A stretch of DNA of 54,272 nt from Salisapilia sapeloensis CBS 127946 (Eukaryota > Protista > Oomycota), in NCBI GenBank assembly GCA_023334545.1, contig JAADVB010000116.1, positions 1 through 54,272 of the forward strand, given 5' to 3'. Shown here one piece after another: positions 3,717-49,115 of the stretch; position 1 is the stretch's first letter; every line of letters begins with the position of its first letter. The translations under genes were made by a program, and so were the position numbers. Under the pieces are notes generated by a model. It was given only the letters and a program-made list of their open reading frames with translations, was not told where the DNA came from and did not search any database.

Positions 3717-4014
3717 GCTCGATGGCTGTTTGCTTTTGCTTAGTCTGGTTTGAAACACTCGAACATTCAAAACAACAACTTGTGTTATACTGATACATTT
3801 CCAGTTACTTGGATATTGGATGAAGTTGGTCATGGGGATAAAGGCATTAAGATGCACTATGAGCAGAGTATGTTAGGACTTTCTAATGATGAAGCAGTGC
3901 ACTAACAAGTATGCATAATTGATAATGAAAATAAGACCAAGTTCATTATGTCAGATTTTATTGACGTAGCCAACCTGCATTGGAATGAAATTTGCAAGAT
4001 GTAGTTAAGAAAAC

Positions 4015-5919: not shown

Positions 5920-8900
5920 ATGCGCTGGTGGATTGAAAAGACACTCATTGCAAGTGTGTTTCTACCACTGAGCTATGGAAATTCTAGTAAGATTATATAT
6001 TGTACTTGCTTTTAATTGTTGAAGTTACATGTTATCTAGTTCCAGGAGATCCGAGGAATGTACTGCTGTCTCCATTGACGCATGACAGCGTGAACATTAC
6101 GTGGGAGCCGCCACTTTCGACTGTACCTGTGACCTCCTACCTTGTTGAGTGGGATCCCATTCCACCCGTTCGGGCGGTGCAGACGGTCACGACATCTCAA
6201 AAGCTCTTCGGGAACGAAATCCAAGAGATACGGACGTACGCTCAGGATGTGAATGCTGTTCAACGTGTCCAGATCCTGTGCACGCCCATATCCGAGGTGC
6301 AGACGATTCGAACGCGTGCTGCGCCCGGCGAAGTGCTTGGAGGGTTGTTCACGATTGAGCTAGATACGACTGCGTTGGGCGGATCAAAGCAGCGGTCTGG
6401 TGTGATTAGTGCCTCTGCACTAGCCGACACGGCTGTGTACTCCGTAAAGGAAATCCTGAATGCGATGCCAAATATCGCTGGTGCCGTGCAGTCCGTCACG
6501 CGTTCACCAGCGGACTTGGAAGGAGGATACACATGGGAAGTCGAGTTCAAAGCTGAATTTGGCAACGTACCGGAGATGACCGTCGAAAGCAACTTTTTAA
6601 CCGGAAGTGGTGCTGACGTCATTATTGAGACACCCACACAAGGCGCATTTATCTCTCAAGGAGGGTTCACACTTGGTTTCCATGATGAATGGACAAAGGA
6701 GTTGAGTTTTGAAGCATCTTCTAAAGAGGTGGAAGAAGCACTTGAAGAATTAAGCAAAATTGCTCGAGTCGGGGTCGCTCGTGAGCCTGCTAGTCCGCAG
6801 AATGCGTTCTCTTGGTTGATCACATTTACCTCAGATGCTGAGTACAATCGAGGCGACGTTGCTCAACTAAGCATCCAAGAAAGCCAAACGTTTCTTGGCG
6901 GCGATGTCTCATTAAAGACAGAGCATGTTACGCGTGGGAACCACCTTTATGGCACGTTTCAGCTTAAATACAAGAACGTACCTACATTGGATATCCCATT
7001 TGACTGCTCGGCGGAGGTGATGCAAACGAGATTGGAGGAACTGAGCACAATTACATCCATTGCAGTCTCCCGAACGAGTGGTCCAGACACAGAGAAAGGA
7101 TATACGTGGCAAGTATCCTTTCTCGATAGTCTCGACAGTCTCGAGCTGTTAGAAATTGAGTCAATGGCGGAATTGCAAGAGACCAGAATTGATAGTGTTG
7201 TATCAAGAGGCATTTCAATCACAAAAGCGAGAGACGGAACACTACAGGAAGTCCAGCAGATCCAAGCTCGACCGTCGGATCCTGCCACCCAAGTGACTAC
7301 TTCGACCAACTATCGTATCATGACTAGCTTTGGCGGTGAAAACGCATTCACAGGTCCGATACCTGCCTTAATGCACAGCTCTGGTAGTTGTGCGTCAGAT
7401 ATGCCTGAGATTCAACAGATTGCTATCATGACAGTGGACGCAAAAGGTGTCGGACGAGATGACTTCGTCTCTCCTTTAGCCATGTACCAAATCGTTTTTG
7501 TATCGGCCAAAACAGGAATAGAAGAGACTACAACGCCATTGTATCTGAATAAGAATGACGGCGATTGTGATGCACTTGCGTCTGATATCAAAGCTAGTCT
7601 GGAAGCGTTGGATGGTGTTATTGGGACTGTCATCGTAGAGTCTACTGGCACGTCTTTCATTAAGTCGAATGAATGTACATGGACAATTACCTTCCCAAAC
7701 GAACCTGGCAATTTGGATGAACTGCGCGTGATTAATGCCTATGCGGAGCCTCCGGTTCCGGAGCAAGTATTGGTGATTGAAGATGACACAATCACCGTTT
7801 CAACGATCCAAGAAGGAAGGATCGAAGTCATCAAGACGGAGCTGGAAAAGCTGCCGAATGTCGGACCAGTTATTGTAACATATAAGCCAAAGACGGGGAA
7901 TAACGCAGACTATTCATGCACTTGGTTCGTCACCTTTGCCGGGAATACCGGGGACCTTCCATTGATGCAAGTCAGTCTAGATGTCGCGACGGTAGACCCT
8001 GCCGAGTATGATACATCGAAGCAGGCGAATGGAGATATCGTCGAGATCGTTGCTGACAAGGAAGGCACGTCAGAGGCATTGTATGGACACTTTGCATTGA
8101 GACTGTATGGTCAACGGACAGGATATGTTCCATTTGATGTGGATGCAATGCAGCTAAAGCGTGAAATTGAGATGACGTTGAACACCGGTAGCGTCTCCGT
8201 TGAACGCCAGCCATCTAATCTGCACGGAGGTTTTACATGGCGCATCGAATTTGAGAGTATCATGGGTGATGTCGAGTTGCTTCACGTGGACATTGGCAGT
8301 CTGGAAGGAACGTATCCATTGGCACAAGTGGAAAACGTTGTCCTAGGTCTGCCTCCTCCATACAACTCGAAAGATGCAGTGAACAAAGTTGCGTTCGGTC
8401 GCTCCGTGGTCACTGACTTTAGTGACTTGACTGTCATCGCTACTGATTTAGATGAAAACGTCCCGTTCTACGCTCAAGTGAGTGCGATGAATGACTTCGG
8501 ATCAAGTGCGTCTGTACCATCGACACCTCAATTCCTACCTCCGACACCTCAGACGCCTAGTGAACCCTCTCAGGTTGTCTTGTCCCACAATGACGGAGAT
8601 TCTATCCAAATATCTATTGTGAGCCCGCGAACCGATGGCGGACGTCCGCTAGATGCATACGAAGTGGAGCTATCTGACAATGGTCCGTTTGTTGATGAAG
8701 TGCAACATGTTCAGTTGTCTACTGGTGTCCAAAATGAAGAGCAAGAAGTCTCTGTGGTTACGGATGGTGTGAGTGAAGTCCAGATCATCCATCTCACATC
8801 TACATACAATGGTGCAGACCAAGTCGAAACTCAGCACGTGGATTGTGATGCTATGAATGACGACGGGTACTTTACTTTGACGTTTGTGGATGAGACAACA

Positions 8901-11900
8901 GCACGTATTAGCGCTTCGGAAACAGACGCGAACGAAATTAAGCGTGTATTGGAAGAACTAGATTCCATCACATCCGTATCTGTCGCGTTTGATGCTGGAC
9001 GAACGTTTGCGTGTGAGCAGTGTGAGCAAAGCGGTGGATGTCCTAGCTCCGGATTCTCCATCACGTACAACCAAGTAGAGGGATACAAAGGCGAGATGCC
9101 ACTGCTTACTCCGGATGTTTATAACCTGAATGGTAATCGACGGGTTCTGGTCACACAGTCGCAAATAGGAAGTGCGCCACCGGGAGGCGAGTTCCAACTA
9201 GAGTATAACAATGAGCTTACTGTACCTATTGCCTTCAACGCTAATGAGGAAGAGCTCCGTGCTGCTCTCCAGCCGCTCGAGCCTGTCTTTACCATTCAAA
9301 TAACAGAAAGCACAAACCTATTGGATGTGGCTGCACAAGATCAGCAACAAAAGCTGTGGCTTGTCACGTTTGATGGAAGTGGATATGTACCAGACTTAAC
9401 TGTACCTCAAAAAGGAAATAAGCTGACAGGCAACGGTGTCGACATTGCGTTCTACACAAAAGGAAACAAGTTTACGGATGCAATTGTATCTGTCGCTGGT
9501 AACTATGCGCGTGGAGAGTTCCAGCTAAGTCTTGGTGGCCACGTCACGGAACAAATTGCCATTGATGCGGCAGATGTCACTGTGAAAGACCGACTGGAAA
9601 AGCTTCCAAACGTCGGTGTTGTAGATGTTCGACGTTATGGTCCGACCAAGTTGAACGAGTACTCGTGGCTTGTGACTTTCGTTTCTAATCCTGGGAACTT
9701 TCCTGTCGGATCAGCGAACATGATGGAGCTGGAAGGAGTTTATAATAGTTTGGAACTGCTTGGTCAAAATAGTCGTGTTCAAGTGTCTACGTCACCGGAA
9801 GGATCGGAGTCTATTGACGGGTTCTTCACATTGAGCTACGGTAGCACGGGAGTCTATACGACTCCTATATCCGCATATGCAACTGCAGAGGGGGTGAAGA
9901 GGGCGCTGGAAGAGCTACCTAGCGTCGGTGGCGTATCGGTGAGTCGAAGGACCAACGTGGATGGCTTCTCATGGTTCGTTACGTTTGACAAGTGTCGAAA
10001 CGTTGATAATGCTGCCGTGTGCAATAACGGAGATGTACCGAACTTGACACCTGATAGCTCGCAACTACTTGGTGGAGACGTGGCAAATCCACCAACAATA
10101 ACTGTAACTAGCGTACAGGAAGGTAATGGCCCATCTAGTGGTCTCACCTACCTCTTCACGGACATGAAAAGTGCTGCACCTTATTTGGCATCTATCGAAA
10201 ACCTCATCTATGGTAAAAGGTACTATGCACGCTCATCGTTCCATTCGGAGATGGGGTACGGACCACGAACGATTTCGGTGCCTGCATACGTGACGACTAA
10301 TCATCTTCCTCCGGGTAAGATGAGACGCGTCGAACTCGTTTCTTCCTCGGCAACGTCTATTAAGGTAGAATGGGAGCCGCCGACATTAAATGGTGGCACG
10401 AGAATATCTGGATATCAACTCTTTATAGCTGATTGGGAAGGAGGAAATTATCGCAAAGTATATGATCGACCAAATGATGCAGCAACATTGTCTACAACAT
10501 TATTGATTGCCAAAGATAATGTGATTGAAAGTGGAAGGCAGTACTACTTTAAAGTACGTGCAGTGAACTTTTGCATGGCTGAGAATGAGGACGAAGGGTG
10601 CTATGGAGCGTTTAGTGACCCTGCGCAGTATCATGTGCGAGATCCAGTGCTTCCAGGCGCTCCGAGAGCACTCTATCGAGACTCTTCGACTACTATTAAT
10701 GATGTGAATGTTGTAAATGACGGCATCATTGTGGTCAATTGGGAACCACCACTGGACAATGGAGGAAGTGAAATTGTCGAGTATGAACTCTATATGGACG
10801 CAAACGATGGCAATGGCTTTATGAAACAGACTCTTTCTGGATCATTCCCTTATGGCTACACGCACTCTGTCAATGGCTTAACAGAAGGTAACACATACCG
10901 GTTCTACGTTCGAGCTGTTAATGCAGTGGGAGCATCCGGACATAGCTCTATCTTGTCTGTCGTCCTTGCAAACGTTCCGCCGCCAGTTCTCAGTGCTCAG
11001 CTTTTGGATGTAACGCCGACGTCGATGCACCTTCGATGGCAGCCACCTAGTCAATGTACATCTTCCTTGACAGCTTGTAATGGAAGCCCTGTGCTTGGTT
11101 ATAAACTGTGGCAGTTTGAAGGTGTGTCAGCGAGTTACTCGAACACGGGATATCCAGTCCATAGTGAAGTGCAACGCATTGAGACGTTCATCGGAACTCC
11201 TGGAAAAGAGGTGCAAGAAATTACGATTACAGATGCAACTGGTAAGCTCCGCATCTACTTGAATGGCGAGACGAGTCACTTGCTGGATGCAAAGGCAAGT
11301 ACCATGGAGATGAAAGCTGCTGTTGAAAGCACTGGGATTGGTGCAGTTGATGTAACGGATGGAGCTACAATGTCTGTGACAGGAAGAAGCTGGAGAGTTA
11401 CGTTTAGTGGATACACTGGTCCTTTAGAGCCGATGGTCATCGTACCTGAGACGCTTGCCAACTCTAATCCACTTGTAGCTTATACAGCTACTGTCGAGCG
11501 TGTTGAGAAAGGAAGTACCGTTCTTGCTGGTGACTTTACCGTCGCCTTTCGAGGATATGAAACTCCGTCTCTGAGCTATGATGTATCCGAGTTGGATATG
11601 AAGCGAGTACTGGAGAACTTGGAGTCTATAGGAATAGTAAGTGTAAAGAGAACCGACAAAACAGATAATGCCAGGTACTGGGATATCACGTTCATGACGG
11701 AGCTAGGTGATCTTCCGTCGATGGTTGTCACTGATGGTAGACTCACTGGAGGTGAAACCAGTGTAAAAGTGTCAACGGAGCGTGAAGGAACGTCTGGATC
11801 AATGATATACGACGGAACGACGTTTCCAGATACGCTCAAGTACACGGCGGAGGGTTTAATTCCTGATACGCTATATTCATTCGTGGTGATTGCAATTAAT

Positions 11901-14900
11901 GCTGCAGGAGATGGTCTCATGGGCATCCCTACGCCAGCGCTGGCTGCGTCTGCTGGTGCCTATAGTGCAAAAACGATTGCCTACGGTGCGTCTTTAACAC
12001 AAGGTCGTGCTGGTGTTGTCTACGAGGTGCAGAGTATCCAAACCAAGTCACTTGGTGGCGCAGACTCTTTTACACTTCAATACGGCGCAAATGAAAACGC
12101 ACTGGGTCCTTTCACAATAGCCTCGACGGTAGATGAGCTAGCAGCAGCTTTGAGAAACGAAGCTGGTGATGTTGTTGTCACAAAGGATGCGCTTATTAAC
12201 GAAGACGTTGTTTGGTTTGTGACTTTTGTCGCAATTCAAGGAGATGTAGACATGATCCGATGCAACTTGGATGCCAGCCAAGTGCTTATTGAAGAGTTTA
12301 TTCGTGGCGACGCGAATGAGTTTACCATTGCCCCGAGAAAAACTTCTGGTGATGTCGTTACGTACTCTAGTCTACCGCTCGAATTTCAAGGCAAAGATGT
12401 CTTTTACACAGAATTGTGGAGCTCTCCCGTGACGGTTGTGGATGGTACGCACGAGTGGGTTTCGGATGGTGGCAAAGCAGTGTTTAAGCCGGTTCGATAT
12501 GAAATTCAAAGGATTGAGATTGACTCGACAGCAGGATCGTTTAATGTGAAATTAGACACATCGAACGTGAGGATTGCTGGTATGGATAGCATCAGTACTG
12601 TCCATGTTGATGCTGCTCTACTTGGTCAGCCAGATACGAGTGACGAGTACGCGTCCAGTTTACTACAAGCAAGTATCGAGTCACTTGAGAATGTCGAATC
12701 GGTGCAAGTGTCTAGAACACAAGGAACAGGTGCTTCACTTCAGACAACTTGGACGTACTTGGTAACGTTCGTGAGTGACTTTTGCGATCTGCCAGAGCTT
12801 GTGCTGGACGGCGATGCTGCATTTATGAGCGAATTGACAACTGTATCTGGTCCGGAAATTACATTTACGGAAGTGCAAAAGGGAAATTGCGATGTGCAGA
12901 CGGTAATGTCATCCGCTAGTGTCGAAGCTGAGTCGCATATCATCGGCATTTCCACTTGGCTGGACGCTAGTTCAGGAACGACATCACTCTCTGGAGACTT
13001 CGAACTTGATGTGGAGGGAACTGGCGTGACGGTTACTGTTGGAGCCACTGCAGCTGATGTAAAAGCACTGCTTGAAGACGCTTTGGATGAAGAGAGTGTA
13101 CAAGTGAGTATGGAATATGCCAATTACGATGGTTCTTCCAACCTCCAGACTTGGCTAGTTACCTTTACGACTATTCTCGAGAGTGCACCAGACATTACGC
13201 TTAAAGCCAACCGACTCGTTGGAAATAATGCACAAGTCCAGATTGAAGAGGTAGAGCGAATGGATGTACCGTTTGCAGGCACATTTGTCCTTAATTTCTT
13301 AGGCGAGACGACACTTGACTTGCCATTTGATATTGAAACGTTGGAGCTGAAGACCGAGTTGGAAAAGTTGCATCAGATAAAGCAAGTGGATGTGAAGAAA
13401 GAGGAGCTTTATAATGGGAACCGATGGATTATATCCTTCACTCAGAACCTCGGTGATCTTCCGCTTTTGAAGGCGCTTCCGTATCGATATGAAGTACAAG
13501 AGGTGGAGACGATAGGAGGAACACCGACGCCTCTTGATGGACACTTTACACTGAAATTCAGAGACGAAGAGAGTGGCTCGATTGCATACGACGCTACAAG
13601 TGAACAGATGAAAGGAGTGATTGAAAGCATGTCTAGTATCGGACTGGTGGATGTGACTAGAAGTGACAAGCTCGACTATGGCAATCGGTACCAATGGCAA
13701 ATTACCTTCCGGTCGATACTGGGAGAAATTGATCTACTTGAAGCGGATGGTTCTCTACTGGAAGGAACACTGCCGTCTGTCCAGGTTACTCAGCTAGTGA
13801 GCGGTAGTGTGGAAGCTCTCACGGGAAGCTTTGTCGAGCTGGATGTGTTCAAGATGAATCCTGGTCTACCGAGCTACAGAGCTCAGTACATCCCAGAAGT
13901 TGCCAATATGGAAGAAGGGTATGCGCTTGCTGTCCAGCAGCTGAGAAAAGGAGGACTACGTGCCTTGTACTATGACAATTACTGGTTCCAGGACTCCCCG
14001 GTTCTGAACAAGATTGATCCGCAGATTAATATGAATTGGGGCACGAATGCCATTACAGAGTACGGACGTGACTATGTCAGTGTTCGATGGATGGGCAAAG
14101 TGACAGTGCCGTATGACGATGACTACGTTATCTACATTCGCTCTGTCGATGAAGTAAAAGTTTGGTTTGATCATGATCTGAAAGTAGATACTTTCAAGAC
14201 AATACCATCTACAGATGTCGGTACAAGTGCCAACTTCCACGTGCGTTTAAGTAAAGATGTTTACTACGATCTGAAGATTGAGTATCGAGAGGAAAGTGGT
14301 CCAGCGGATATGTACTTGTACTGGAGTTCATCTTACTTACCCTACCAGCTCATTCCTTCGGTGCATTTGTGGTACGGTGAGCATATTATGGACAGTCCAT
14401 TTGCAGTGCAAGTTACTCCTGGCAGCATGGATTTCCCTTATACTACAGCATACGGGGATGGACTCATTAAAGGCACGGCTGGTATTTTGTCTACATTTAT
14501 TATCCAGGCAAAGGATCAAGCTAATAACAATAAGATCGCCGGTGGAGACTTGTTTGAAGTAATCTTAACACACAAGCTCAAAGGCAACCTTCGATTGACC
14601 CCATTTGAAGAGATCGAGTATCTTGGTGACGGCCAGTACTTGGTTAAGTACCTGCCAAGTGTCAGTGGACAGTACTCGCTTTCGATCAAGACGCTCGATA
14701 ATATGGACATCTACTGTGGACTCGGTGTTGCGAACAAGTGCAGTCCGTTTACAGTGTCTGTCTCGCCTGGTCCAGTGACATCCCACACGAGTCAAGCTTA
14801 CGGTTCTTATGCAACCGGCAAGTCGAATAACGGTTTGAGAGAAGTAATAGCTGGGCAACTCGCCACTTTTGCGATTCAAGCACGAGATACGTTTGAGAAT

Positions 14901-26900: not shown

Positions 26901-29900
26901 CAGTCAGCTGAACAAGTTTTTATCAAGGTGAGTGAAAAGGTAAAAGGAGATGCTGGACTGGGTGCAGGATCTAATGAGAATAAGCAAGTGATACACTCCG
27001 AGACTGTAAAACCTCGATATAGTGTCCAGGAAGTATCAATCTACAGTGCTTCGCCTGTAGATATAAGAGGAACAATTCGACTGCAGTACGCAGGAGAATC
27101 TACTGGTGATATCGATGTCATTTCAACTGCAGACGTTGTGAAAAAGAAGCTGGAAAACTTGTATTCTATCGATACGGTGATGGTGACATCAACTCCTGTC
27201 AGTGGAGATAAATTCCTTCCAGTACAAAGGTATGGTGTCAAATGGAGTATCACAATTGCACCAGCAGATAGCATCTTTGCCAGTCCTAGTATGCTATTGA
27301 CCACGCAAAGTTCAGTAACGAAAGCTTGGAGACAAATGTCTTGTGGTGGAACCTTACTTGGAACATCACCATGTGCACAAGTATCCAGTGTAGAAGAGTC
27401 TGGACAAGTGTACAATGCGCTCATAGACTTAAACGACGTTGGATCCGATTTGAGCTCCGTGTCGTACACTGCGACAGTCTCCGCTATCAACTCCCGAAGC
27501 GACTTTAAGAGCAAAACAGTGTCGAGTAAAAAACCAGTGTACATTAGGAATCGAGCTCCTTCTGCTGTGGTGGATTTGGTGGCCAGTCCACTTGATGAAA
27601 GCACCATTGGTGTCAAGTGGAAACCGTCCCTTTCTTCAGGAGGTGATGCTATCCAGAACTACAGAGTCCAGTGGGATGTGAGTGAAAGCTTTACTGGTGT
27701 GAGCGCCTATTCTGGTGCTGATATTATTCAAACTATCGGAACACAAGTGTTCAATTACGAGATAAAGAGACTCGATAGTTCGTACGAGTATTACGTGCGA
27801 GTCATACCTTATAACGCACAAGGGTATGGAAACCCAGCGCTTGCCCAAGTGATCTTTAGTAACCAGCGAGTGGTTCGTATGATGCTGAAGAAGGATAATG
27901 GTGTCGACTTTGGAGCGCTTGATAGTGCTCTGCAGTACTTTAGACTTCACTTTACAAACTATAATACGCTCGAGACAGAGTTGATTCCAGTAAATGCTGA
28001 TGCCGCAGCGGTGGAAGAGGAGCTAAACAAGCTGGATGCTGTCGGCATGGTTTCCGTTACGAGGGACGATCATTCTAAAGGTGACGCCAATCTGTATGAC
28101 AGCATGTCGACTTCAGACTTTTTCCTAGACTGGCGTATCACGTTCATTCAAAGCTCTGTGGAAGGGATACGTCCGAATGATCTCGGTGACCTTGTCGTTA
28201 CACTGGACACGCAAGTAGCTACACCATTCGCCCAAGGGGACTTTACTGTCCAACCTATTAGTGACGAAGTAGAAGGCACAAGATCCGTTACTCCTCAAGC
28301 GATGCCAATTGCCATTTCGAAGGACCAAATACAGGTATCTGTCGTTGACGACACTTCGATCGGTGTCTACTGGACACTCGACCCGGCTCAAGTATCAAAG
28401 GTTCGGATAGAATGGAGCGATGTGCCGTATTTTGATCGATCAAGTTATTCGGACGAGAACATGTATGCAACGGTGACGGGTCTTGCAGCTATAGTTCCAA
28501 CAGCTGACGAAAAGTACTTGATCACAGGCCTATCCACTGGACTTTTGTACTACGTTCGCATTTCTGCTTTCAACGGTGACCTGGTCAATTCGCCTGACAA
28601 ACATCAAGGCTACAGTGATCCGATACTTGCTCAAGTTGTGGATGCTCACGGGAATAAAATTTCGTCACTCACTATCGCTCCGGCAGTCCAAATTCCATAT
28701 AAGCCGACAAGTGCTCGCATGAAAGTTAGCTCACTGGACATTCACGACCAGATTGAGCTCTTGTTCACCAGTCCTTCGCTCAACTATCTAGGCTTTCAAG
28801 CCGGTGATGGTGGTGACGCTATTACCAAGTATAGGGTGATGGTGGATACTAATACAGACTTTTCAAGTAGCAATAGGTTTAATGTGGACTTTAGCACGGG
28901 GGATGTTGATGGTAACCCACTGGCTTGTGTTAATGAAGAGTGCTCTTTCCCAATAGGCGCGACTGTGCAGAGTCTAAGCATTATGAAGGGAGCGACTGGA
29001 GAGTTTAAGCTGCAGAAAGGAGGGGAATTCACAAAGCGTATATGTCAGGACTGCAACATAGATCTAGTGCGTTCGTCCAATGGACTCGTGACGACTTTAA
29101 CTGCAGCAGATTTGACATGGGCAAATGATATGGGTACGCATGAGATGATCTCGTTGCGAAACGTCGATGGGCTCGCGTGCATGTTTCAAAAGTCGTCTAC
29201 GCAGTCTGCAAACCCGAACGAGCTCACTGTCACTTCTCACAATGGTGCAGCTTGTGGTCTAGTGGATACAGGTGGAGCGTTCGACGTTTACACACGAGAC
29301 ACTTCCAGTGCTTGCATCGGCAGTGCCGTGGCTTCTAGTGATCTAGCGACTGCACTTTTGAATTTATATGGAGACAAAGTGACTGTGAACCAGGAGGTGG
29401 ACTCGTCTACTTCGATGGCAAAGACATTCATGGTTACTTTTACCGGAGCAAGTGTATCGGGAAGACAAGATCCCATGCACGTTGTGGCTGCAGACGGAAC
29501 GGCTACGTGTACGAAGATGACTGGAAACGTGTGGGTAGAGTCAGAGATCCCTGGTGGGTTCTTGATGTCTGGTCAAAAGTACGCGATTCAAATTGCTGCA
29601 ATCAACTCTGCTGGCATCGGAGACTTTCTCCCAGCTAGAGCAGACTGTCATAATGGTCCATGTACAGAGGACTTCCGACTGGCTGCTCAAGCTCCTCCAG
29701 AAGCTCCTGAAACCGCGATCGTGCTCAACAAAATGGCTGACCATGAACAGTTGGAAGTTCAGTGGACACCACCTCTCGGCACGAATGGAGGTGCAGTTGT
29801 GAACTACCTTGTCGAGTACTCTACTGATTCATTCGGGCGAGTCTCGTTGTGTACGTCTTGTGCGACACAATTAGTTGGTCAAGAGCTTACGATCGATGTC

Positions 29901-32900
29901 GTGCCTGCCATTACGATCCCTGATGGTCACTTGATTGCTATTAGTAGTCTCCAACCCGAATGTCTGCTTATTAAAAAAGCAGATAAAAGCTCTAGTGGAA
30001 CGAAGAGAGTGTATGAAGTTGAAGCCAACCACGGCTGTGATGACTTTGCCGAACAGCTCGTTAATATTGAAGGTTTGCATAGCTCCAACGGTGGCTTTGT
30101 CCACGTCCAGCCAACGACTGCGCTTGTAGTAGATAGCAATGTCTATCAAACTGCGTTAACAAGTCTAGTTGCTGGTACTGCGTACGAGATCCGCGTTCGA
30201 GCACAGAATACGGAAGGCATTAGTGCTTTCACACCAGCTATTCCTACCTGTCCCAACTCTGTTTCGGATTGCACGGACGCTGTGTTGGGAGGTAACGCTC
30301 TGGCGATCGTGACGAGAGAAATCCCGAGTGTGCCAGTGGTCGAGCTTCCGTCTCTCCTTCGCACAGGTTCCTTTACGAACGAGTTGAAATTCAGTGAAAG
30401 TACGATCGAAATGGCACTGTCGGATCCGCACGAATGGGCTGGGTACGAACAAATTGATAGGTATAAAGTCGAGTGGGATGCTCTTCCAGACTTTTCATCG
30501 TCCAAGCAAAGTGCTTTGGTGGACTTGACTGGTCTCGAGCCTTCGCTGTTTACTACTAGAGAGTTGTGTAGTACATGTGTAGATGCACTCGCAGGAACGC
30601 TGCTGACGCTCTCATCTGATGTTGATGCGTTGCAGCCAGAAGAGTACGTTACCATTGACATGGGTACGACGAACTGTCTGCTGCATATAGAAAGTAAAAC
30701 TAGTCCATCCTCTTATAATGTCTACGCCGGTCACACCTGTGGCACGATCGCTTCTCCGGCAGCTTTATCCATGCATAAGCGCATCAAGTACATTTACGAG
30801 ATTACTGGACTAACTATGGGCGTACCAGTGTATGTACGTGCTGCAGCGCATAACTCACTCGGGTATGGTCCCTTTTCGGATCCGGTGAAAGTGAAGCCAC
30901 AACGACAGTCTGATCCACCCTACAACGTCCAAGTGCGTAAGCTGACACCGGAGCAAGATCCGAACATTGAGCGCGCAACTCGTATTTCTTCCGTGATGGT
31001 GACGTTTGCGTACCCGATGATTGATTTGATAACGGACTTTTATGGTGCTGGAGGGGACGATATTGAAGAGTTTTTGATCGAATGGGCAGATGCTGCGTGG
31101 AGTCAGCCGAAGAAAGAGGTGCAGACGATCGCCATTACTTCAAGCGGCAGTAATATAGTGTCAGGAGAGTTTACGTTGATGCTCGACACGACCATTGGAG
31201 CATGCCCTTTATGTCTAGAACATAGTCGAAGTGTCACAAATGCTATTTCACATAACGCAGATGCACCAGAGCTAGTGAAAGCGTTGCGAGCGCTCCCGAA
31301 TATCGGTCAGGTGGATGTGCGACGAGATCCAGCGGCTTGCACGGCATTCGACGAATGTACTTGGAAAGTGACGTTTATCTCCGAGATAGGGGACATTCCG
31401 ATGCTTGTTGTCGATAGCCATCGGCTGTATGATGCTGCTGGTGGTACGGTCGACGTCACGATAACTTCTGACAACGGTGATACGAACGGATTAAAGCTAT
31501 GTCCAACGAAGGACGCTGGTATTCTAAACGAAGGGATGGAGCACTGTGGTCGCGTGAGCTCTTCCGCAGACTCTAGCTACTCGTATTTGATCACTGGACT
31601 GGATCCTGGTGCGACGTATTACGTGCGTATGGCAGCGTATAGTACGATGGGATACAGCACTCAGCGTGTATCGGCTCCTGAATTTATAACCGTCCCGTAT
31701 GAAACTCCGAGTGCCGTTGTCTCTCCATTCAATGCCGATGGTAGACCGCTCTTGAAACTCTCTGGTCCGACTTCTTTAGTTGTAGTCTTCAACGCTCCTG
31801 TCTTTACCGGTGGTAGTGAAATCACGTCATATACGATCGAGTGGGATCGATCGGAAGACTTTACGAGCGGACCGAATGGTGACGCCATGGGAGCTCACTA
31901 TCTCGTGAATGACGCGTCAATTCGAAAGTACAGTACGAACGAAATGTTCTACAAGATTGAAGGACTGGCCACGAATCAAGTCTACTACGTTCGTGTGTTT
32001 GCTATTAACGAAGAGAAGGGTGCTGGACATCCAGTGCTGACGATGCCGACGCATGAGAAACCTCGTTCGAAACCGGAGATGCCGGCTTTACTAGAGACGT
32101 CGAATGCCGTACCAGAGGGTAGAAGCATGCAGGTGGCATGGACTCCGCCGGAGAATGATGCAAGGTCTGACAGCGCCATCGTAGCGTATCATGTACATGT
32201 GCTTGAGAAGAGTCTAACGGCACCATTCTTTGGTACACCAACGATCCAGACGCTAGAGACGAAGAACACGGTGGACGATGGATTCTTCACCTTGATGTTC
32301 GAAGGAGACACGAACTTTGTCACGGCACCGTATCGGAAACTTCCGGGTACCATCACTGTCTTGCAGGGAAGCTCGATTGTACGTACGAGTGAAGACTTGA
32401 CTGGATTGCTGGAAGTAGGAGATGTTGTCTTAATTGCAGGAGCCAAGTACCTCGTTGGTGCAACCGGGACTTTCTCTGCTACGCAGTTCCCACTCGCAGA
32501 TACTGCAGATATAAATGCCTTGTCTGGAGCAACGTTTGCGTCGACGCCTACGACGTATACTGGAACGACAATAGAGGACGAAGAACTGTACGCGCTGTGG
32601 AAAACGACTCCACTCGAGTATAACATCACTCCGAAGGACATGAAAGAGGCATTAGAGATGCTGCCTAGCGTAGGTATCGTCAACATCGAGCGTACGTCCA
32701 TAGCTGGAAATACGTACACGTGGGATATCACGTTCCTATCGACACTTCCTCGACCGAACAACCTGCTGGTGGTGAATGGACGGTATCTAACTGGTACGAG
32801 TGCTGGTGCCAGTGTGACGTTGACGGAACCAGGCAAAAATCCGACAAACTTGCACACGTTGACTGTGCCTACGAGTGAATTGAATGGAGAGCTACAGACG

Positions 32901-35900
32901 GTTATCGATGGTCTTGACACTGGCGTCGAGTACTTTGTTCAAGTCGCGGCTGAAAATGATCTTGGCGTCGGAGCGTTTAAGAGTAATATGGAAACGATAG
33001 GCTTCATCCCGACTAAGACACCTGACGCCATTGCAGACTTGCGTGTAATCGTACGATCAGCAACGTCTATAGGTGTAAAGTATGATCAGTTAGAGCGTTC
33101 TGGTGGTCTGCCAGTGGACAAGTATCGCCTCACGATTGACTCGATGTCTACATTCGAAAACACCAATACAAACTTGGTGCTAGATGATATTGCGAGAAGT
33201 CAAAAGTACTATCGAGTCACGACGGCTGCGCACACTGGTCCATTCACGCCTGAAAGTAAATTTATGCTATCAACCGTCCAATTACGTCCAGAAGTGTTGC
33301 TGCGGAACCCGCAACGGATTGATGCAAAGCTATCGGCATACGTGCAGCTGACTGAATTCGAAACCACAGGTTTCTTGATGAGGAGCAAACCGGAACTTGA
33401 TCGAGGTATCGGAGATGCGAGTCTAGTTGCGGAGGTAGGTCGAGGCCAAGTGCTTCGAGTCCGTAATGAACTCTTCACGGCATGTCTGGATTCGAATGTA
33501 AAGTACACTTTACCGAGTGTTAAAGTATCTGCTGTGAATGGCGATCGGTCAGAATTGACATTAGCTACTGCGTTATCTACGGCATGGATGGATGTGATAG
33601 TTTCTGGTACGATCCTTTCGCTTGGTGTTTCGGACTGGGCATGCCGTCTACAGGTGAATGTCGACATGGCACAGGCAGATGCTATCCAAGTGTCGCCACA
33701 TGATTGTCCGCAAGAGTTCTTTGATGAGAAGATGCCACTGGATGTAAATGTCCATATTGGACCTGCATTGCTGCCTGTATGCAATTACGATGATGCTTGG
33801 ACTCGAGTCTCACTGGAGAAACGTACAAGTATAATAGAGAAATTCAGGAATGAGAATCTGGACAATCCGATTGCGATTTTCAAGTCGACGCAGTCGCTAG
33901 GAATGATGAGTCAACTCGTGACGAATGAACAAGTCGGTCGCGTATCTCCTATGCCTCTTACGTTGGATGCAGAAGTAGCGCTTGAGTGTGGAGAGTACTT
34001 TCATCTCGGGTCTTTCTTTTCATCAAAACTCTTCCGGGTTGTAAACAAGTGCGATAGCACCAACACTTGCGGCTGTGATGTGGGTTTGATGGCTTCTACG
34101 ATTGAGATTGGCGATGTGCATAACGTTGCGACGGCCTTATCACAGTCAGATCTTGCTTTTAGTACGAAGGAAGTGCAGAAAGTAACGATTAAAGCGGCAG
34201 ACCCGATGGACTTTGGCGTCGGAGGCTTCCGTCTAAAGTTCGGAGGTGAAATCACTTCGACCACGAAAAGAGGTGGCGACGGTGGTGTCGACTTGAATGA
34301 CGATGTCGGGTGTCTTGTATGGGCTTCTGGTATAACTGACGATGACGCGGAAGCAGACCTTTTGGATATCAAAGACGAACTCTTGCGATTCGACACCATT
34401 GATAACGTACGCGTATCTCGAGAGATTACGCAAGATCGAAAGCAAGTGAATTATATTGTCGAGTTCCTCGGTATGGGAGGTAGAGGTAGATTACCAGAGC
34501 TGTCTGTGGTCAATGTCGGGAGTCAAGGATGCAGTGCATTCAGTGCTGCGGTCACGACGCATCAGGTGACGAGAGAACAAACGAGTCAAGTCAGCGTGTA
34601 CCGTTTACCTACCACTAGTCCCATTTCATTTGAAGCAACAGAAGCTGATGTGCAGCATGCTTTGGAAGCATTGGTGGATGTGGCTAAAGTCGACGTTGAT
34701 CGACAGACTCGAGACCATGGATATGACTGGGAGATCACGTTTAATTCGTATTCAGACAACGACGACTACTTGCCAGACGCAATCGTAGGAAATGGAGAGA
34801 TGCTGGTGGCAGTCTATGATCCAAAAGTGGTGGTGACTCCATTCAATCGACTACAAGTCGACCTAAGACCATATCCAGCTCTCATCGCATCCACTTCGAT
34901 CTTTGTCAAGCTGCAGGCACACAACTCAAACGGATTCGGTGCTGACTCGTTGCCGAATCCAGTGTCAACGCAGCTGAGTGACCAACCGCCTCTCGTCGTA
35001 CGAGATGCACTAGTGGAAATCCTGTCTGACACACAAGTCGCTGTTGAGTGGAGTGGTCCGAATAGCTATTTGAATGCAGATACTTTAAACTCGCTTTTAG
35101 AAATAACCGAGTACCGGCTCGAGTGGTGGCCAACGGGCGAAGAGAATAAGAAGAAGTACACGATTTTCCACGCGAGAGAGTCGGATCCGGTGCGGCAGGA
35201 TGTGCAATTGGTCAGTGTGAGTGCGCCAAAATTCTCTTCGAACGATGGGAAGACGTACGAGAAGACTTACACGATGGCAGGGACGTATCAGATCGGATAC
35301 GACAGTTGCTGGAGTCGAGAGCTGAGCTATGGTTGTACCGAGTTAGAGATGAAGGAAGCGTTGGAAGACCTTCCGACCATTCATCAAGTGCATGTAGATC
35401 GAGAGTTGGCTGCGAATGGGTACTCGTACATCATTCGTTTCGACCAGGCTTTCGGAAAGGACAGTGGGACTTCGAAGATGTTTTATAATTCTGATCTAGC
35501 TCCACCAGCACTCAACAAGCTGGAGACGAGGAACACGAACTTGCTCTTGTGTGACTCTACACCAGGCACGTCATGCTTCCCACACGTTCCGGATAGTGTG
35601 GGCCCAAGTGTCAGTCGTTCCGTCATGACAGAGGTACAGTCCCTACGCTGCAAAGGTGCTCCTGTATCGTCTGTCGGCTTCTTCCTCGAGCTAAACGGTC
35701 AAAAGACGAATAAAATTGCATCGGACGGTACGCTAATAGACTTGAAGGATGCTATCGAAGCAATGCCGGACGTTGGTGTCGTCAGCGTCACCTTTGCCAG
35801 TAACCCAGCCGCTACGACATCCTTGTGTGACGCTACGTCTCCCCCGTTCGTCCGGATTGACTTTATGACATTGCAAGGAGATGTACCACTCATGGTCGTT

Positions 35901-37181
35901 TCTGCAGATTCAGATGCTGGCGTAAGTGTCGTGACGAGAGAAGTTGAGAAGGGTAAGAACCAGCGTGAAAAGGGTCGGAAACCGTACTCGTTTGTCGTCC
36001 ATGGATTGGCACCTACAAAAACTTATGCACTCCGTATCGCTGGTGCAAATAGGATCGGATACGGATACTTTTCCGATATTCTTCAAATTAAGACGTACTT
36101 GCAGCCACCAAGTCCCCCTGCTTCCATCCAAGTCGCCGAGAACTTGGATGCACAACGGCTCCTTGTCACGTTTGAAGAACCTCCATTCGATGGTGGAAAT
36201 GACATTACAGGTTACCATATTGAATGGGACTTGATGCCGTCGCTTACGAGTACTTGTGGGGAAGCGATGGAAGTTGCAAGCATTCGCTTTGCAAGCGAAA
36301 ATGCGCTAGATGCTGTTCCGACGTTTGGTTTCACTCTTACGAGCCGATTTGCTTTCAGCGGCGACACGCCAAGTAATAGTAGATGCATCTCGTGGAAATC
36401 GACTGCTGCGCAAGTAGAGACGCTGGTGAAGGAACACGCCGGAGAGTTTTCGGCGTTAGAACACGTTCGGGTGACAAAGTATGGAGACGATAGTGCCAAA
36501 TGGGACTATGGACATACCTATCGTATCACGTTTGTGAATGAAGATGAAGACCCATTCTTCCAAGTGCCTGAGATAGAGTTTTATGCCGGATGCTCATTTG
36601 CGAATACCAAGTCTATTGCCTTCGAGCAAATGCACCCGGACTTGGATGTAATCACAGCAACGGGGGTGGTCAATACGGTGAAGAAAGCTTGTGATGCCAA
36701 CTTACTACGCAGTCGGTTGTACCACACCATTTCGGAAAACCAGGCACTGACGACTGCACTCTCGGCACCAGCACTGTCGCTCGGGTTGGAGTATATTGGA
36801 GCACACGCAGATATACTGTGTGAGTCGTGTGTGCAAACACTTGACGCGAGCAACAAGCTGACATTGGCATCGCCAATCAGCACGTCTCCACTGCCAAATC
36901 CGTATGTAATTCTAGAGGATCCTCTTCATGGTGCTTTCTGCGTTATGGAGCTGGTCGGATACAGCGATGGTGATACGACAGTCACAGTTGATCTTATGGA
37001 AGCAGAAGGGGTACATGGCGTTGCATGCTCTCTCGAGCTGCCTTTCGAAAAGCAAGCATATCGGATGAAGCAGTTCAATTTGCGAGCGTATTGGATCGCC
37101 AACTTGGTGTCTGGGAAACAGTACACTATATCCGTTCGTGCTGAGAACAGTGTAGGTCGAGGAGATGCCATCATTGTTTAA
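5920..37181 (+). CDS. Giant secreted multidomain protein, about 10,402 aa: FN3 (~22), filamin/Ig (~9), PA14 (3), unnamed repeat module (~40). Exons 5920-5986 and 6040-37181
   Basis: A 31-kb stop-free ORF. The ORF-track start at 6000 is a TTG. An upstream ATG at 5920 encodes the signal-like MRWWIEKTLIASVFLPLSYGNS and splices in frame (GTAAGA at 5987, TAG ending 6039) to the first FN3 (PGDPRNV..VNITWEPP..YLVEWD). FN3, filamin (AYGxGL..AG..F.IQA.D..N) and PA14 (GGL...YY.N..F..D.QINF.WG..YVSVRW.G) motifs recur along the ORF. The 5' exon is less certain than the ORF itself. Confidence 0.9.
5987..6039 (+). other. Predicted 53-nt phase-1 intron of the giant gene (alternative in-frame acceptor at 6045)
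   Basis: GTAAGA donor, T-rich interior with TTTTAAT, TAG acceptor. It restores the frame between ATG 5920 and the long ORF, and its size matches the two L21 introns. Confidence 0.7.
13950..14375 (+). other. PA14 domain 1 in the giant protein
   Basis: GGLRALYYDNYWF..KIDPQINMNWG..YVSVRWMGKV..SVDEVKVWFD..YYDLKIEYREESG..LYWSS. Confidence 0.8.
18399..18835 (+). other. PA14 domain 2 in the giant protein
   Basis: GGLAGYYY..RHDLSVDFSWG..YYSVMWTGEI..GSDEGAMLMLDG..YYAIQIKYR..VQLQWGS. Confidence 0.8.
22464..22900 (+). other. PA14 domain 3 in the giant protein
   Basis: GGLLASYYTNRWLF..RVDKEINFEW..YVSVRWQGYI..VNDGGRVWIG..ITVEYREEVG..LFWES. Confidence 0.8.
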
Positions 37182-38598
37182 CACACCAACATGCATATTT
37201 TAATCTAGATTTCGTATCATCGTTATTTGAGCTGTAAACCAAGTAGAGGAATATGTACGTAAAGCGATGAGACAATCGAGTACGACAGGAATATCTTTCT
37301 CATTGCTTTAGCGCACTGGCGTACGGCGTTTTATCGTTCTAACAAGTATTGTTCTAGTGGCTACTTTCTTACAACATACTCGAAATAGATCTATATGTGT
37401 ACATATTTGCAACATGTGATGCAACTTGCAGAGAGCGCGCTACCACACGACGGTACGAGTGTCGCTTGAAGTCGAAAGCGGCTTCAATGTACCTTCAAAC
37501 TATCTTATCCCGCGATACGATGTTTATCGCACGGACGCTCCGTGATAAGTACGTATTGCACGCACGGGTAGAGCCTGCGCGAACGTCAGGATCTTTTCCC
37601 GTAGAAAAACGACGTTAGACCGTCATGAAGTGTCCCTTTGAGCTCCAGTTGTCGCATACATCTCGCGACAGAGATACCTTCTGCCGGTGCCATGAAGAAT
37701 ACGAAGATGTACCTCGAGGCGACGAGTCATTTATTTACGACACGCGAACTAGAAATACAAGTTTGGGGATGCCATCTTCTAGATCTGGTCGACTGCCTGG
37801 TTGCTTGCGACAGTTGTCGAAAGATACTCTTGAACATCGCATCGTATTGATCCGCGAAACGCCGCCGTCGGGTGTAGATATGCGGACTTGCTTCGGCTTA
37901 CAACGAGTAGATGCAAAATTTACTCATAATGTAGAAGAGCTTGGGCATGTATGCTAGCTTTCCATTTCAAATGCGCCTCTTTACGATCCGTCCCATGGTA
38001 ACCCTGACAAGAAGATCAGTCTGCCAGAGGGACGCTGGGCGCCATGGTGCGTGTTCACAGCTACCTCGTTCACTCTAACTTCCGACCTTTTTTAATTAAG
38101 GATCCGTAACGGATAACGTTTTCATGCAAAAAGTACTTGCGACGTATGCGTTCATTTCTTGCGCCATGAAAAGGAGGTATGTCATTCTATTGCGAATGAA
38201 TGGGTATGCAAACATCTGAACGATAAGTGGAAATCTAGGCTCCAGCTCTTCCAAAACTCCGGCAGAACGCTCTCCCAAGAAAGCTGGCAGCGAGTACGTT
38301 TATGCACGCTAGCCACCTTTTGCCCTCCTGGCCAATGATAGTCGGCATCGTTTCTGATCGGGGCTTCTGATTAGTTGATACTGATGCGAAAGCCAGAACT
38401 AGGTATTCAAGGTGCTGGCGTGTGAGCAATGCCGCTATCGTGCGCGCCCTACAACGCTGCGACATCGAACGCTGGTCTTTTCTGCACGAAGTTACAACAA
38501 GAGTATTCTTTGTTCTAATGAAAAGGCTTGCCAACTGGTACGAGCGGCGGCAGCGACGATACGCGGTGGTGGCGTTGAAAATGACATGAGGCACTCAG

Positions 38599-38615: not shown

Positions 38616-38714
38616 CCTCCTCGAGTGCACACGGAAGTAGCAAAGAGCCCGAAGCGCAAGAGCTCTACGCCCAACGCACCAGCAGGAATCTACACGAAGT
38701 CTTCATTTTAAACC

Positions 38715-48974: not shown

Positions 48975-49115
48975 GACAGTCGAAAACAATTGATTCTGGT
49001 TGCCAGTCTCCCGTGGCCTTCGGACGACCTCCTCGTCTATGGTTGATCGAAGGTTTCTCCAAGTGACTTAAGTGTGGAAAAAGCGAAACCACTGGTCCAT
49101 CGCCGCACAATCGAG

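What the first reader, a model, noticed from the sequence alone, without database searches (positions are those of the whole stretch)
5920..37181. A secreted protein of about 10,400 aa, encoded almost entirely by one 31-kb exon, with a three-zone FN3 / filamin-PA14 / FN3 plan
Seen: an uninterrupted ORF with an N-terminal FN3 zone (~6040-11950), a central filamin+PA14 zone (~11950-22940) and a C-terminal FN3 zone (~22960-37181). Established: PA14 domains bind glycans in fungal adhesins (Flo/Epa), and FN3 and filamin repeats form extended rods. Inference: this is a >1 MDa extracellular fibre, adhesin or matrix scaffold. Automated pipelines would probably label it titin-like, which hides that it looks secreted and lectin-bearing. 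It is the best candidate here for an undescribed system.
Basis: partly seen in the sequence, partly recalled or inferred. Interest (0 to 1): 0.85.

Follow-up and report, generated by a model that had tools for sequence, protein, structure and literature searches.

The report
Giant secreted oomycete surface protein
A real, conserved gene for a 1.13-megadalton secreted oomycete protein, built from fibronectin-type domains that are split open to carry small modules also found on bacteriophage surfaces; it is probably a zoospore or cyst surface or adhesion scaffold, and its function has never been tested.

Summary
Collinear orthologues of about 10,000 aa occur across oomycetes, and related giants occur in diatoms, Aureococcus and Vitrella.

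Secretion is supported by independent signatures:
- signal-peptide leaders in 25 of 26 homologues;
- no transmembrane or GPI signal;
- N-glycosylation sequons purged (9 against 72 expected), and not purged in titin or twitchin;
- paired cysteines.

It is homologous to the surface "CTE-like" domains of mycobacteriophage Bxb1 (profile E = 1.4e-32). Fifteen of the 22 FN3 domains are split, carrying inserts that hold up to six modules.

A 10,566-aa P. parasitica protein (PPTG_04587), probably the orthologue, is abundant in zoospore membrane and flagellar proteomes.

Not confirmed: the 5' exon and intron (RNA contigs start inside the proposed intron), lectin activity, and the strand of the RNA coverage (a spliced antisense transcript overlaps the 3' end).

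Verdict: a largely correct finding and an uncharacterised family with an unusual nested architecture. Earlier scan notes on this stretch and on another piece of this genome raised related points.

The parts
5920..5986 (+). Putative exon 1: a 22-codon signal-peptide-like leader ending in phase 1
   Evidence: Read from the sequence: positive n-region, 10-residue hydrophobic core, small residues at -3 and -1. Homologues have such leaders directly before the first FN3. No RNA contig covers it.
5987..6039 (+). Putative 53-nt intron (GTAAG...CTAG)
   Evidence: Phase and consensus fit. Its size matches two RNA-proven introns of 54 and 58 nt in this window. However, RNA contigs begin at 6016 and 6020 inside it and no joint was seen. 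Its in-frame translation is itself hydrophobic, so another N-terminal model is possible.
6040..37181 (+). Main exon of the giant gene (stop codon at 37179-37181); mature protein of about 10,379 aa, 1.128 MDa, pI 4.6
   Evidence: collinear orthologues; RNA coverage.
6039..8540 (+). Supermodule 1: FN3 N-half, orphan EVQ strands, six CTE-like modules, FN3 C-half
   Evidence: AF2 model with pLDDT 86.5. Single crystal FN3 domains align 90-94 residues at about 2 A, Z 12-13, over model range 1..834. Profile positions 1-43 hit FN3 N-halves and positions 767-812 hit FN3 C-halves.
6039..11946 (+). N zone: 5 FN3 domains (3 split) carrying 12 modules
12021..13766 (+). Run of six CTE-like modules at the start of the central zone
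   Evidence: aa 2011-2592.
11475..11768 (+). Representative CTE-like module (about 93 aa, beta-beta-alpha-beta-beta)
   Evidence: AF2 model with pLDDT 81 and pTM 0.71. No Pfam family. The profile hits Bxb1 gp23 at E = 1.4e-32. Fold matches.
13950..14342 (+). PA14 domain 1
   Evidence: Pfam, 62 bits; self-HMM.
14436..15485 (+). Three filamin-type repeats
18111..18797 (+). Filamin repeat followed directly by PA14 domain 2
20127..20396 (+). Filamin repeat
   Evidence: Pfam, 61 bits; self-HMM.
22464..22868 (+). PA14 domain 3
22953..37178 (+). C zone: 17 FN3 domains (12 split) with 15 modules; the protein ends on the G strand of the last FN3
   Evidence: The C-terminal end point is conserved in homologues.
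35026..35083 (-). Intron of an antisense transcript (GT..AG on the minus strand)
   Evidence: The joint is present in all four RNA runs; sequence read.
37205..37258 (-). Second antisense intron, just beyond the stop codon
   Evidence: The joint is present in run X3 only; sequence read.

Best explanation
The gene encodes a secreted, anchorless, acidic extracellular protein of 1.13 MDa, belonging to a family found across stramenopiles.

Shown here:
- It is built as a chain of 22 FN3 'nodes'.
- Fifteen nodes are split after the C strand. Their looped-out inserts together hold 26 of the 42 modules, up to six per insert; two inserts contain no recognised module.
- These approximately 93-aa alpha/beta modules are homologous to the surface-exposed CTE-like domains of mycobacteriophage Bxb1.
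- A central block carries three PA14 and at least five filamin domains.
- N-glycosylation sequons are purged and cysteines occur in short-range pairs.

Inferred:
- It enters the ER through an N-terminal signal peptide and is exported unglycosylated and disulfide-stapled.
- Having no membrane anchor, it stays at the cell surface or in the matrix by many weak contacts, probably with glycans, through PA14 domains and CTE-like modules.
- It therefore acts as a multivalent coat, adhesion or matrix scaffold of the wall-less zoospore and the young cyst.
For: Real and conserved:
- ORF and domains.
- Orthologues collinear over 5,800 to 8,300 residues, reaching the exact C-terminus.

Secretory route:
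- 25 of 26 homologues have a Met-initiated hydrophobic leader directly before the first FN3.
- There is no TM-like segment (maximum KD19 = 1.61) and no hydrophobic tail.
- Sequons: 9 against 71.6 +/- 6.1 expected, with the reversed-motif control at 64. Orthologues and paralogous oomycete giants are also purged. Twitchin and a titin-like protein are not, and nor are four other ORFs of this window (27 against 18).
- Cysteines: 50 of 107 have a partner within 10 residues, against 19.6 +/- 5 expected. This is not seen in titin or twitchin.

Architecture:
- 42 modules.
- 22 N-halves and 22 C-halves in strict alternation.
- FN3 re-formed from both ends of the AF2 model.

Module identity:
- Bxb1 gp23 at E = 1.4e-32, with weaker hits to the capsid and tail-tube proteins.
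- tblastn hits to actinobacteriophage minor tail and tail sheath proteins.
- Fold matches.
- Bxb1 baseplate accessory proteins are reported to interact with host wall glycans (PMC13252515).

Biology:
- PPTG_04587 of P. parasitica (10,566 aa; SignalP positive; 0 TM; no GPI) was detected with 197 unique peptides. Spectral counts were 22-374 in cell-body membranes and 289-679 in flagellar membranes.
- It is expressed in swimming zoospores and was proposed as an adhesion candidate.
- Giant secreted FN3 proteins of S. parasitica are cyst-upregulated.
- RNA contigs cover the ORF and stop at its ends.
Against: - The signal-peptide exon is not confirmed by RNA.
- The strand of the RNA coverage is unknown, and a spliced antisense transcript overlaps the 3' end.
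- Orthology of PPTG_04587 rests on size and annotation, not on an alignment. No tool could reach that sequence.
- Glycan binding is untested. The PA14 consensus Asp-Asp site reads DE, DE and ND, and no binding data exist for the eukaryotic module.
- The family also occurs in free-living diatoms and in Aureococcus, so the role is not specific to pathogens or to zoospores.
- Expression is low in the only RNA runs available (depth 3-8 at the 5' end).
Confidence: 0.55

Rival explanations
1. It is a flagellar surface component: part of, or attached to, the mastigoneme or flagellar glycocalyx of the zoospore, rather than a general coat or adhesin.
For: - The probable orthologue has about twice as many spectra in flagellar as in cell-body membrane fractions.
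- The module fold recurs in stramenopile secreted 'EGF-like domain-containing' proteins, the class that includes mastigoneme proteins.
- There is a weak profile hit to OCM6 of PDB 9ufe (E = 0.22).
Against: - The protein is also abundant in the cell-body fraction, whereas true mastigoneme proteins were absent there.
- The OCM6 hit is not significant and did not recur with the larger profile.
- No EGF domains were found.
- A relative occurs in Aureococcus, which to my knowledge has no known flagellate stage.
Confidence: 0.15
2. It is a purely structural extracellular scaffold, such as a cyst-coat, wall or matrix spacer or a self-assembling fibre, with no lectin activity. On this view the modules serve packing or self-association.
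For: - The near-complete purge of N-glycan sites fits tight protein-protein packing.
- The PA14 sugar and calcium motif is non-canonical.
- The nested architecture suggests rigid arms.
- Fibrillar material is discharged between aggregating zoospores.
Against: - PA14 and the phage CTE-like domains are both associated with glycan contacts in their known contexts (and established knowledge of PA14).
- Without an anchor, some binding activity is needed to hold the protein at the surface.
Confidence: 0.22
3. It is an intracellular titin-like cytoskeletal ruler or spring, as the automatic names suggest.
For: - Database names are 'Titin'.
- FN3 N-halves match titin FN3 domains best in sequence.
Against: - Homologues carry leader peptides.
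- Sequon purge and Cys pairing are absent from real titin and twitchin.
- PA14 domains are present.
- No kinase or I-set Ig domains were found.
- The probable orthologue is SignalP positive.
Confidence: 0.02

Closest known systems
Oomycete giant FN3 proteins noted as adhesion candidates: P. parasitica PPTG_04587 (10,566 aa) and S. parasitica SPRG_05384, SPRG_19863, SPRG_03974
   Same: They are giant, signal-peptide-bearing FN3-rich proteins of zoospores and cysts. PPTG_04587 matches in size and in its SP-positive, no-TM, no-GPI profile, and is probably the orthologue. The sequence-verified orthologues are P0001 (Globisporangium), P0002 (P. infestans), P0003 (S. parasitica SPRG_04153), P0011 (Aphanomyces) and P0013 (Pythium insidiosum).
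   Different: None has been functionally or structurally analysed. The papers list them only as FN3 proteins. The CTE-like module, the split FN3 domains and the sequon purge are not described in the papers read here.
Mycobacteriophage Bxb1 CTE and CTE-like domains (gp23 'tail tip cage', major capsid protein, tail tube gp19; PDB 9d93, 9d9w, 9d94)
   Same: Sequence-level homology of the module: profile E = 1.4e-32, with shared 'EVQ' first strand and G-x-F-x-L second strand. The fold is the same. The domains are surface-exposed and repeated. In gp23 the N-parts and C-parts of successive copies are interleaved, which suggests nesting there too.
   Different: The phage domains decorate a virion and occur in 1 to 3 copies. 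Here 42 copies sit in a eukaryotic secreted protein, most of them inside FN3 domains. The apparent insertion point differs: after strand 1 here, after strand 3 in gp23.
Fungal PA14 adhesins (Flo and Epa families)
   Same: A PA14 domain in a large secreted surface protein.
   Different: In Flo and Epa proteins a single N-terminal PA14 sits on a Ser/Thr-rich, heavily glycosylated stalk with a GPI anchor. Here three PA14 domains are internal, there is no such stalk, N-glycan sites are purged, there is no GPI signal, and the Asp-Asp site is not conserved.
Titin and twitchin
   Same: Size, and many FN3 domains.
   Different: Those proteins are intracellular, contain I-set Ig and kinase domains, have contiguous FN3 domains, and show neither sequon purge nor Cys pairing.
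Insulin-receptor-type FN3 with an insert domain in the C-C' region
   Same: A precedent for an FN3 domain interrupted after strand C. The insulin receptor FnIII-2 aligned to the model with chain range 594..805.
   Different: That is a single, largely disordered insert of about 120 residues. Here 15 FN3 domains carry folded inserts of about 100 to 740 residues.

Membership tests
Fibronectin type III (PF00041) | Pfam score above the gathering cut-off | tested here: met
   31.7 to 101.5 bits against a cut-off of 25, in 7 pieces.
Fibronectin type III (PF00041) | Seven-strand beta-sandwich fold | tested here: met
   Crystal FN3 domains align 90-94 residues at rmsd about 2 A with Z 12-13 to the AF2 model, using both ends of the 834-residue unit.
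PA14 (PF07691) | Pfam score above the gathering cut-off | tested here: met
   Three domains at 62, 59.8 and 57 bits against a cut-off of 24.
PA14 lectins of the Flo5/Epa1 type | Adjacent Asp-Asp calcium and sugar site (feature recalled from my own knowledge of the family) | tested here: not met
   The aligned consensus site reads DE, DE and ND in the three domains. Binding by another mode is not excluded.
Flo/Epa-type fungal adhesins | N-terminal PA14, Ser/Thr-rich glycosylated stalk, C-terminal GPI signal | tested here: not met
   The PA14 domains are internal. Sequons are purged. There is no hydrophobic C-terminal tail.
Filamin/ABP280 repeat (PF00630) | Pfam score above the gathering cut-off | tested here: met
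   40 and 61.1 bits against a cut-off of 26.9; further copies lie just below it. Five copies by self-HMM.
Bxb1 CTE-like domain family (no Pfam entry) | Significant sequence-profile match to the solved phage domains | tested here: met
   E = 1.4e-32 to gp23, 0.0012 to the capsid protein and 0.0065 to the tail tube. tblastn hits to other actinophage tail proteins at 4e-6 and 5e-5.
Bxb1 CTE-like domain family (no Pfam entry) | Same fold | tested here: met
   Foldseek probability 0.99-1.00 with TM up to 0.67. VIA Z 11.3 at rmsd 2.2 A over 89 residues.
Bxb1 CTE-like domain family (no Pfam entry) | Binding to cell-surface glycans | not testable with these tools
   Only a secondary statement for Bxb1 baseplate accessory proteins was available (PMC13252515). 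The primary paper is not held.
Titin/twitchin | Cytosolic protein with I-set Ig domains, a kinase domain and no signal peptide | tested here: not met
   No I-set or kinase Pfam hits. Homologues carry leader peptides. Sequon and Cys signatures differ from twitchin and titin-like proteins.
Stramenopile mastigoneme proteins (Ocm/PnMas) | Signal peptide plus three or four EGF-like domains | tested here: not met
   No EGF family in any Pfam scan. OCM6 was hit only at E = 0.22.
Orthologue group of P. parasitica PPTG_04587 | Collinear sequence alignment | not testable with these tools
   The sequence could not be reached: protein searches returned nothing longer than 7,939 aa. Size (10,566 against about 10,400 aa) and the SP-positive, 0-TM, no-GPI profile agree. 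The other P. parasitica giant FN3 locus corresponds in size to the 7,400-aa paralogue family.

The most novel reading that the evidence does not exclude
The protein represents a previously undescribed architectural class of eukaryotic extracellular protein: a 'Russian-doll' polymer. FN3 domains are opened to hold chains of phage-type CTE modules, and those modules are themselves nested, with early orphan EVQ strands completing later strand-less bodies. The result would be a rigid bottle-brush fibre. This fibre would be the long-sought fibrillar material that coats oomycete zoospores and cysts and glues them together, and a stramenopile-wide surface element.
Probability: 0.3. Interest if true: 0.8.

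Novelty: new variant of a known kind. Interest (0 to 1): 0.62.

Why it matters
What oomycete zoospores and cysts use to coat themselves, stick to hosts and aggregate is only partly known. Those steps start infection in major plant and fish diseases. If PPTG_04587 is indeed the orthologue, this family is among the most heavily detected proteins in a zoospore membrane proteome, yet databases label it 'Titin' and nobody has studied it.

The analysis gives concrete handles for study:
- a defined module to express and test for binding;
- a clear prediction of secretion without N-glycans;
- a structural hypothesis (split FN3 nodes with nested side arms) that electron microscopy can check.

It also documents a domain shared between actinobacteriophage virion surfaces and stramenopile giant proteins. 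That domain has no Pfam entry and would improve annotation of more than a thousand protein clusters.

Tried and rejected
- Whole-protein self-BLAST returned only the self hit. It was replaced by windowed BLAST and iterative HMMs.
- The terminal RGD in the FG loop of the last FN3 is not conserved in orthologues, so it was dropped.
- The mastigoneme link through OCM6 rests on E = 0.22 only and did not recur. It is kept as a lead.
- Pfam on the ten largest unassigned gaps found nothing except a partial filamin.
- Pfam, PHROGs and Swiss-Prot structures give the module no established name.
- Splice confirmation failed: no joint at 5986/6040, and contigs start inside the proposed intron.
- Orthologue gene structure could not be compared. 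P0002 is too long for the look-up, P0044 is not on record, and in P0046 the leader and the first FN3 lie in one ORF, which says nothing about our intron.
- The primary Bxb1 paper is not held.
- The P. parasitica transcriptome supplement is truncated before PPTG_04587, and the EV preprint has no held supplements.
- AF2 coordinates are not exposed to scripts, so strand-to-body contacts could not be measured.
- The organism's name is coded. From identities (45% to Globisporangium, 44% to Phytophthora, 36% to Saprolegnia) it is an oomycete outside those genera.
Full report
**1. The observation**

The window holds one open reading frame from 6000 to 37181 on the + strand. It has 10,393 codons and is open from 5991.

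- fn3 above its cut-off in seven of eleven pieces;
- three PA14 domains at 57-62 bits against a cut-off of 24;
- filamin repeats.

The last FN3 of the N zone ends near nt 11946. PA14 #3 ends at nt 22868. The first FN3 of the C zone begins at nt 22953.

Internal repeats are only 25-45% identical, so the gene is not a recent expansion or a mis-assembly.

**2. Conservation**

A search restricted to giant proteins found collinear orthologues:

| Organism | Protein | Identity | Region of the window protein covered |
|---|---|---|---|
| Globisporangium ultimum | P0001 | 45% | aa 17-5788 |
| Phytophthora infestans | P0002 | 44% | aa 17-5211 (36% over aa 5288-7481) |
| Saprolegnia parasitica SPRG_04153 | P0003 | 36% | aa 16-8208 |
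| Aphanomyces euteiches | P0011 | 34% | aa 2793-10391 |
| Pythium insidiosum | P0013 | 37% | aa 3667 to the last residue |

More distant relatives with the same domain set occur in Thalassiosira, Aureococcus and Vitrella. Several are auto-named 'Titin'. A second, paralogous family of about 7,400 aa also exists in oomycetes.

An exhaustive search with the first 834 residues found 1,149 cluster representatives at E <= 1e-3.

**3. Is it secreted?**

Five independent lines agree.

1. **Leaders.** In 25 of 26 homologues whose match begins at the first FN3, a Met-initiated hydrophobic leader lies directly in front of the 'VP-x-x-P' start of that FN3.
2. **No anchor.** There is no TM-like segment anywhere (maximum 19-residue Kyte-Doolittle mean 1.61). 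The protein ends on the G strand of its last FN3. P0013, P0147 and P0116 end at or within 3 residues of that point. P0011 and P0004 run 6-11 residues further, with no hydrophobic tail.
3. **Sequon purge.** N-x-S/T sequons number 9 against 71.6 +/- 6.1 expected, while the reversed motif occurs 64 times. The purge is even across the three zones (3 vs 18.6, 3 vs 21.2, 3 vs 31.4). It is shared by the oomycete orthologues (for example 22 vs 53 and 26 vs 70) and by the paralogous giants. It is absent from twitchin (44 vs 39.5), from a titin-like protein (52 vs 40.2) and from the four other large ORFs of this window (27 vs 18.1). Only exposure to the ER glycosylation machinery explains selection on this motif.
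4. **Cysteine pairing.** 50 of 107 Cys have a partner within 10 residues, against 19.6 +/- 5.0 expected. Orthologues show the same pattern; twitchin and the titin-like protein do not.
5. **Proteomics.** The probable P. parasitica orthologue scores SignalP positive, 0 TM, no GPI.

RNA does not confirm them. No contig covers 5700-6015, no joint was found, and two contigs begin at 6016 and 6020, inside the proposed intron. The in-frame translation of that 'intron' is itself strongly hydrophobic, directly before VPGDP. The exact N-terminal model is therefore open, although either version yields a leader.

**4.

Iterative HMMs built from the protein itself find 42 copies of an approximately 93-aa module, covering about 38% of the protein. 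No Pfam family matches it. The ESM Atlas places it in unnamed clusters, mainly from diatoms, oomycetes and green algae.

Its AF2 model (pLDDT 81, pTM 0.71) is a small beta-beta-alpha-beta-beta domain.

A profile of the 41 aligned copies hits these mycobacteriophage Bxb1 proteins:
- 'tail tip cage gp23' at E = 1.4e-32, with copies that also begin with 'EVQ';
- the major capsid protein at E = 0.0012;
- the tail tube protein at E = 0.0065.

Other supporting matches:
- A two-module query finds minor tail proteins of Mycobacterium phages (E = 4e-6) and tail sheath proteins of Gordonia phages (E = 5e-5) by plain tblastn.
- Fold searches agree and add the outer domains of the flagellar cap FliD.
- In AlphaFold DB, stramenopile secreted 'EGF-like domain-containing' proteins also match.

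The phage literature calls these CTE or CTE-like domains. It reports that Bxb1 baseplate accessory proteins contact host wall glycans (PMC13252515).

**5. Split FN3 domains**

Separate profiles for the N-terminal and C-terminal halves of FN3 find 22 of each, in strict alternation. The six C-halves first missed were all found in the gaps where they were predicted (E = 6e-4 to 0.023). None of 14 control gaps scored better than E = 0.5.

Seven FN3 domains are contiguous. Fifteen are interrupted after strand C by about 100 to 740 residues, holding up to six modules each. Twenty-six of the 42 modules lie inside FN3 domains.

The AF2 model of the first unit (834 residues, 25-sequence alignment, pLDDT 86.5) shows the two halves re-forming one FN3:
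- Single crystal FN3 domains align 90-94 residues at about 2 A, Z 12-13, over model range 1..834.
- Profile positions 1-43 match FN3 N-halves and positions 767-812 match FN3 C-halves of solved proteins.

The layout is conserved across the 24 aligned homologues.

**6. Possible deeper nesting**

EVQ-type first strands occur 33 times against 5 +/- 2 expected. Sixteen are 'orphans' outside module envelopes. Ten modules lack their first strand, and several orphans lie just upstream of such bodies: the orphans at 420 and 473 precede the bodies at 499 and 593, and the orphan at 8751 precedes the body at 8865.

A single Bxb1 capsid CTE domain aligns 89 residues at 2.2 A over model range 43..770. In gp23 three N-parts precede the C-parts.

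An earlier scan note on another piece of this genome proposed the same idea.

**7. Expression**

Four runs labelled RNA (a label the tool marks as a guess), all from one study, behave like real RNA libraries. Intergenic depth is 0-10, while the next gene reaches hundreds to about 14,000.

Coverage of the giant ORF:
- patchy at depth 3-8 in its first 3 kb;
- 22-42% of sampled words present in the middle 10 kb;
- continuous at depth 20-64 in the last 2.8 kb, ending at about 37204-37212, just after the stop codon.

Two joints have GT..AG ends on the minus strand:
- 35083->35026 in all four runs, at 12-51x against 26-63x for the unspliced form;
- 37258->37205 in one run.

So a spliced antisense transcript with no long ORF overlaps the 3' end. 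Contigs carry no strand information, so the sense share of the coverage is unknown.

**8. Literature**

- The P. parasitica zoospore membrane proteome lists PPTG_04587 (10,566 aa, 'Titin') with 197 unique peptides. Spectral counts were 181/22/359/374 in cell-body membranes and 679/557/289/504 in flagellar membranes (PMC12223298 supplement).
- The same gene is expressed in swimming zoospores. It was proposed, with other FN3-rich genes, to mediate cell-cell adhesion. An anti-fibronectin antibody decorates the fibrillar material between aggregated zoospores (PMC7409359).
- In S. parasitica, giant secreted FN3 proteins are higher in cysts than in mycelium and are uncharacterised (PMC5771568).
- Orthology of PPTG_04587 is probable but not verified. 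Its size fits. The other P. parasitica giant FN3 locus, PPTG_01092 plus PPTG_01093, corresponds in size to the 7,400-aa family.

**9. Mechanism**

Shown: a conserved, anchorless, acidic (pI 4.6), 1.128-MDa protein with signatures of passage through the ER. It has a backbone of FN3 nodes, side arms of phage-type modules, and a PA14-filamin core.

Inferred: it is exported and held at the zoospore or cyst surface or in the matrix by many weak contacts, probably with glycans. There it acts as a coat, adhesion or aggregation scaffold.

Lectin activity is not established. The PA14 consensus Asp-Asp site reads DE, DE and ND.

Rivals are a flagellar or mastigoneme-associated role, a purely structural self-packing fibre, and (disfavoured) an intracellular titin-like protein.

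**10. Verdict**

The family is known to databases and has been mentioned in a few papers, but it is uncharacterised. The split-FN3 architecture, the phage-related module and the sequon purge are not described in any paper read here. I rate it a new variant of a known kind (giant secreted adhesin-like proteins), with interest 0.62.

Noticed in passing
window 33176-37290 (- strand); introns 35026-35083 and 37205-37258: A spliced antisense transcript overlaps the 3' end of the giant gene. It has two canonical minus-strand GT..AG introns of 58 and 54 nt, the first seen in all four RNA runs at a depth comparable to the unspliced form. There is no long minus-strand ORF. It may be a regulatory natural antisense RNA.
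   Followed up: partly
window 38660-40300 (+): The neighbouring gene (594-aa ORF, no Pfam family) is expressed at very high depth, up to about 14,000 in the same runs. It contains internal repeats: reads fit two places and leave loose ends.
   Followed up: no
window 5991-6039: The proposed intron, read in the frame of the giant ORF, encodes a strongly hydrophobic stretch directly before the first FN3. RNA contigs start at 6016 and 6020. A different N-terminal exon structure is possible.
   Followed up: partly
PDB 9d93 chain M (Bxb1 gp23), residues 269-593: The module profile hits three N-terminal parts in a row and then C-terminal parts. This suggests nested CTE-like domains in a solved phage protein as well.
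   Followed up: partly
P0006 (metagenome) and P0014 (Aureococcus): Unlike the oomycete proteins, these homologues are enriched in N-glycosylation sequons (82 vs 64 and 61 vs 27 expected). Lineages seem to have gone opposite ways on glycosylation.
   Followed up: no
window 45396-48989 (-): A 1,198-aa protein combines a TPR array with an MTPAP-like poly(A) polymerase palm domain.
   Followed up: no
window 2298-3857 (-): An actin-family protein whose Pfam match begins only at residue 93 of the translated ORF, so it may carry an N-terminal extension of up to about 90 residues. The ORF was called with a bacterial GTG start, so the true start is unknown.
   Followed up: no
L001 5579-5622: In a Logan assembly the homologous giant gene is called as two overlapping genes. 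The cause may be a frameshift or an assembly error. Such splits would help explain why orthologues appear truncated in databases.
   Followed up: no
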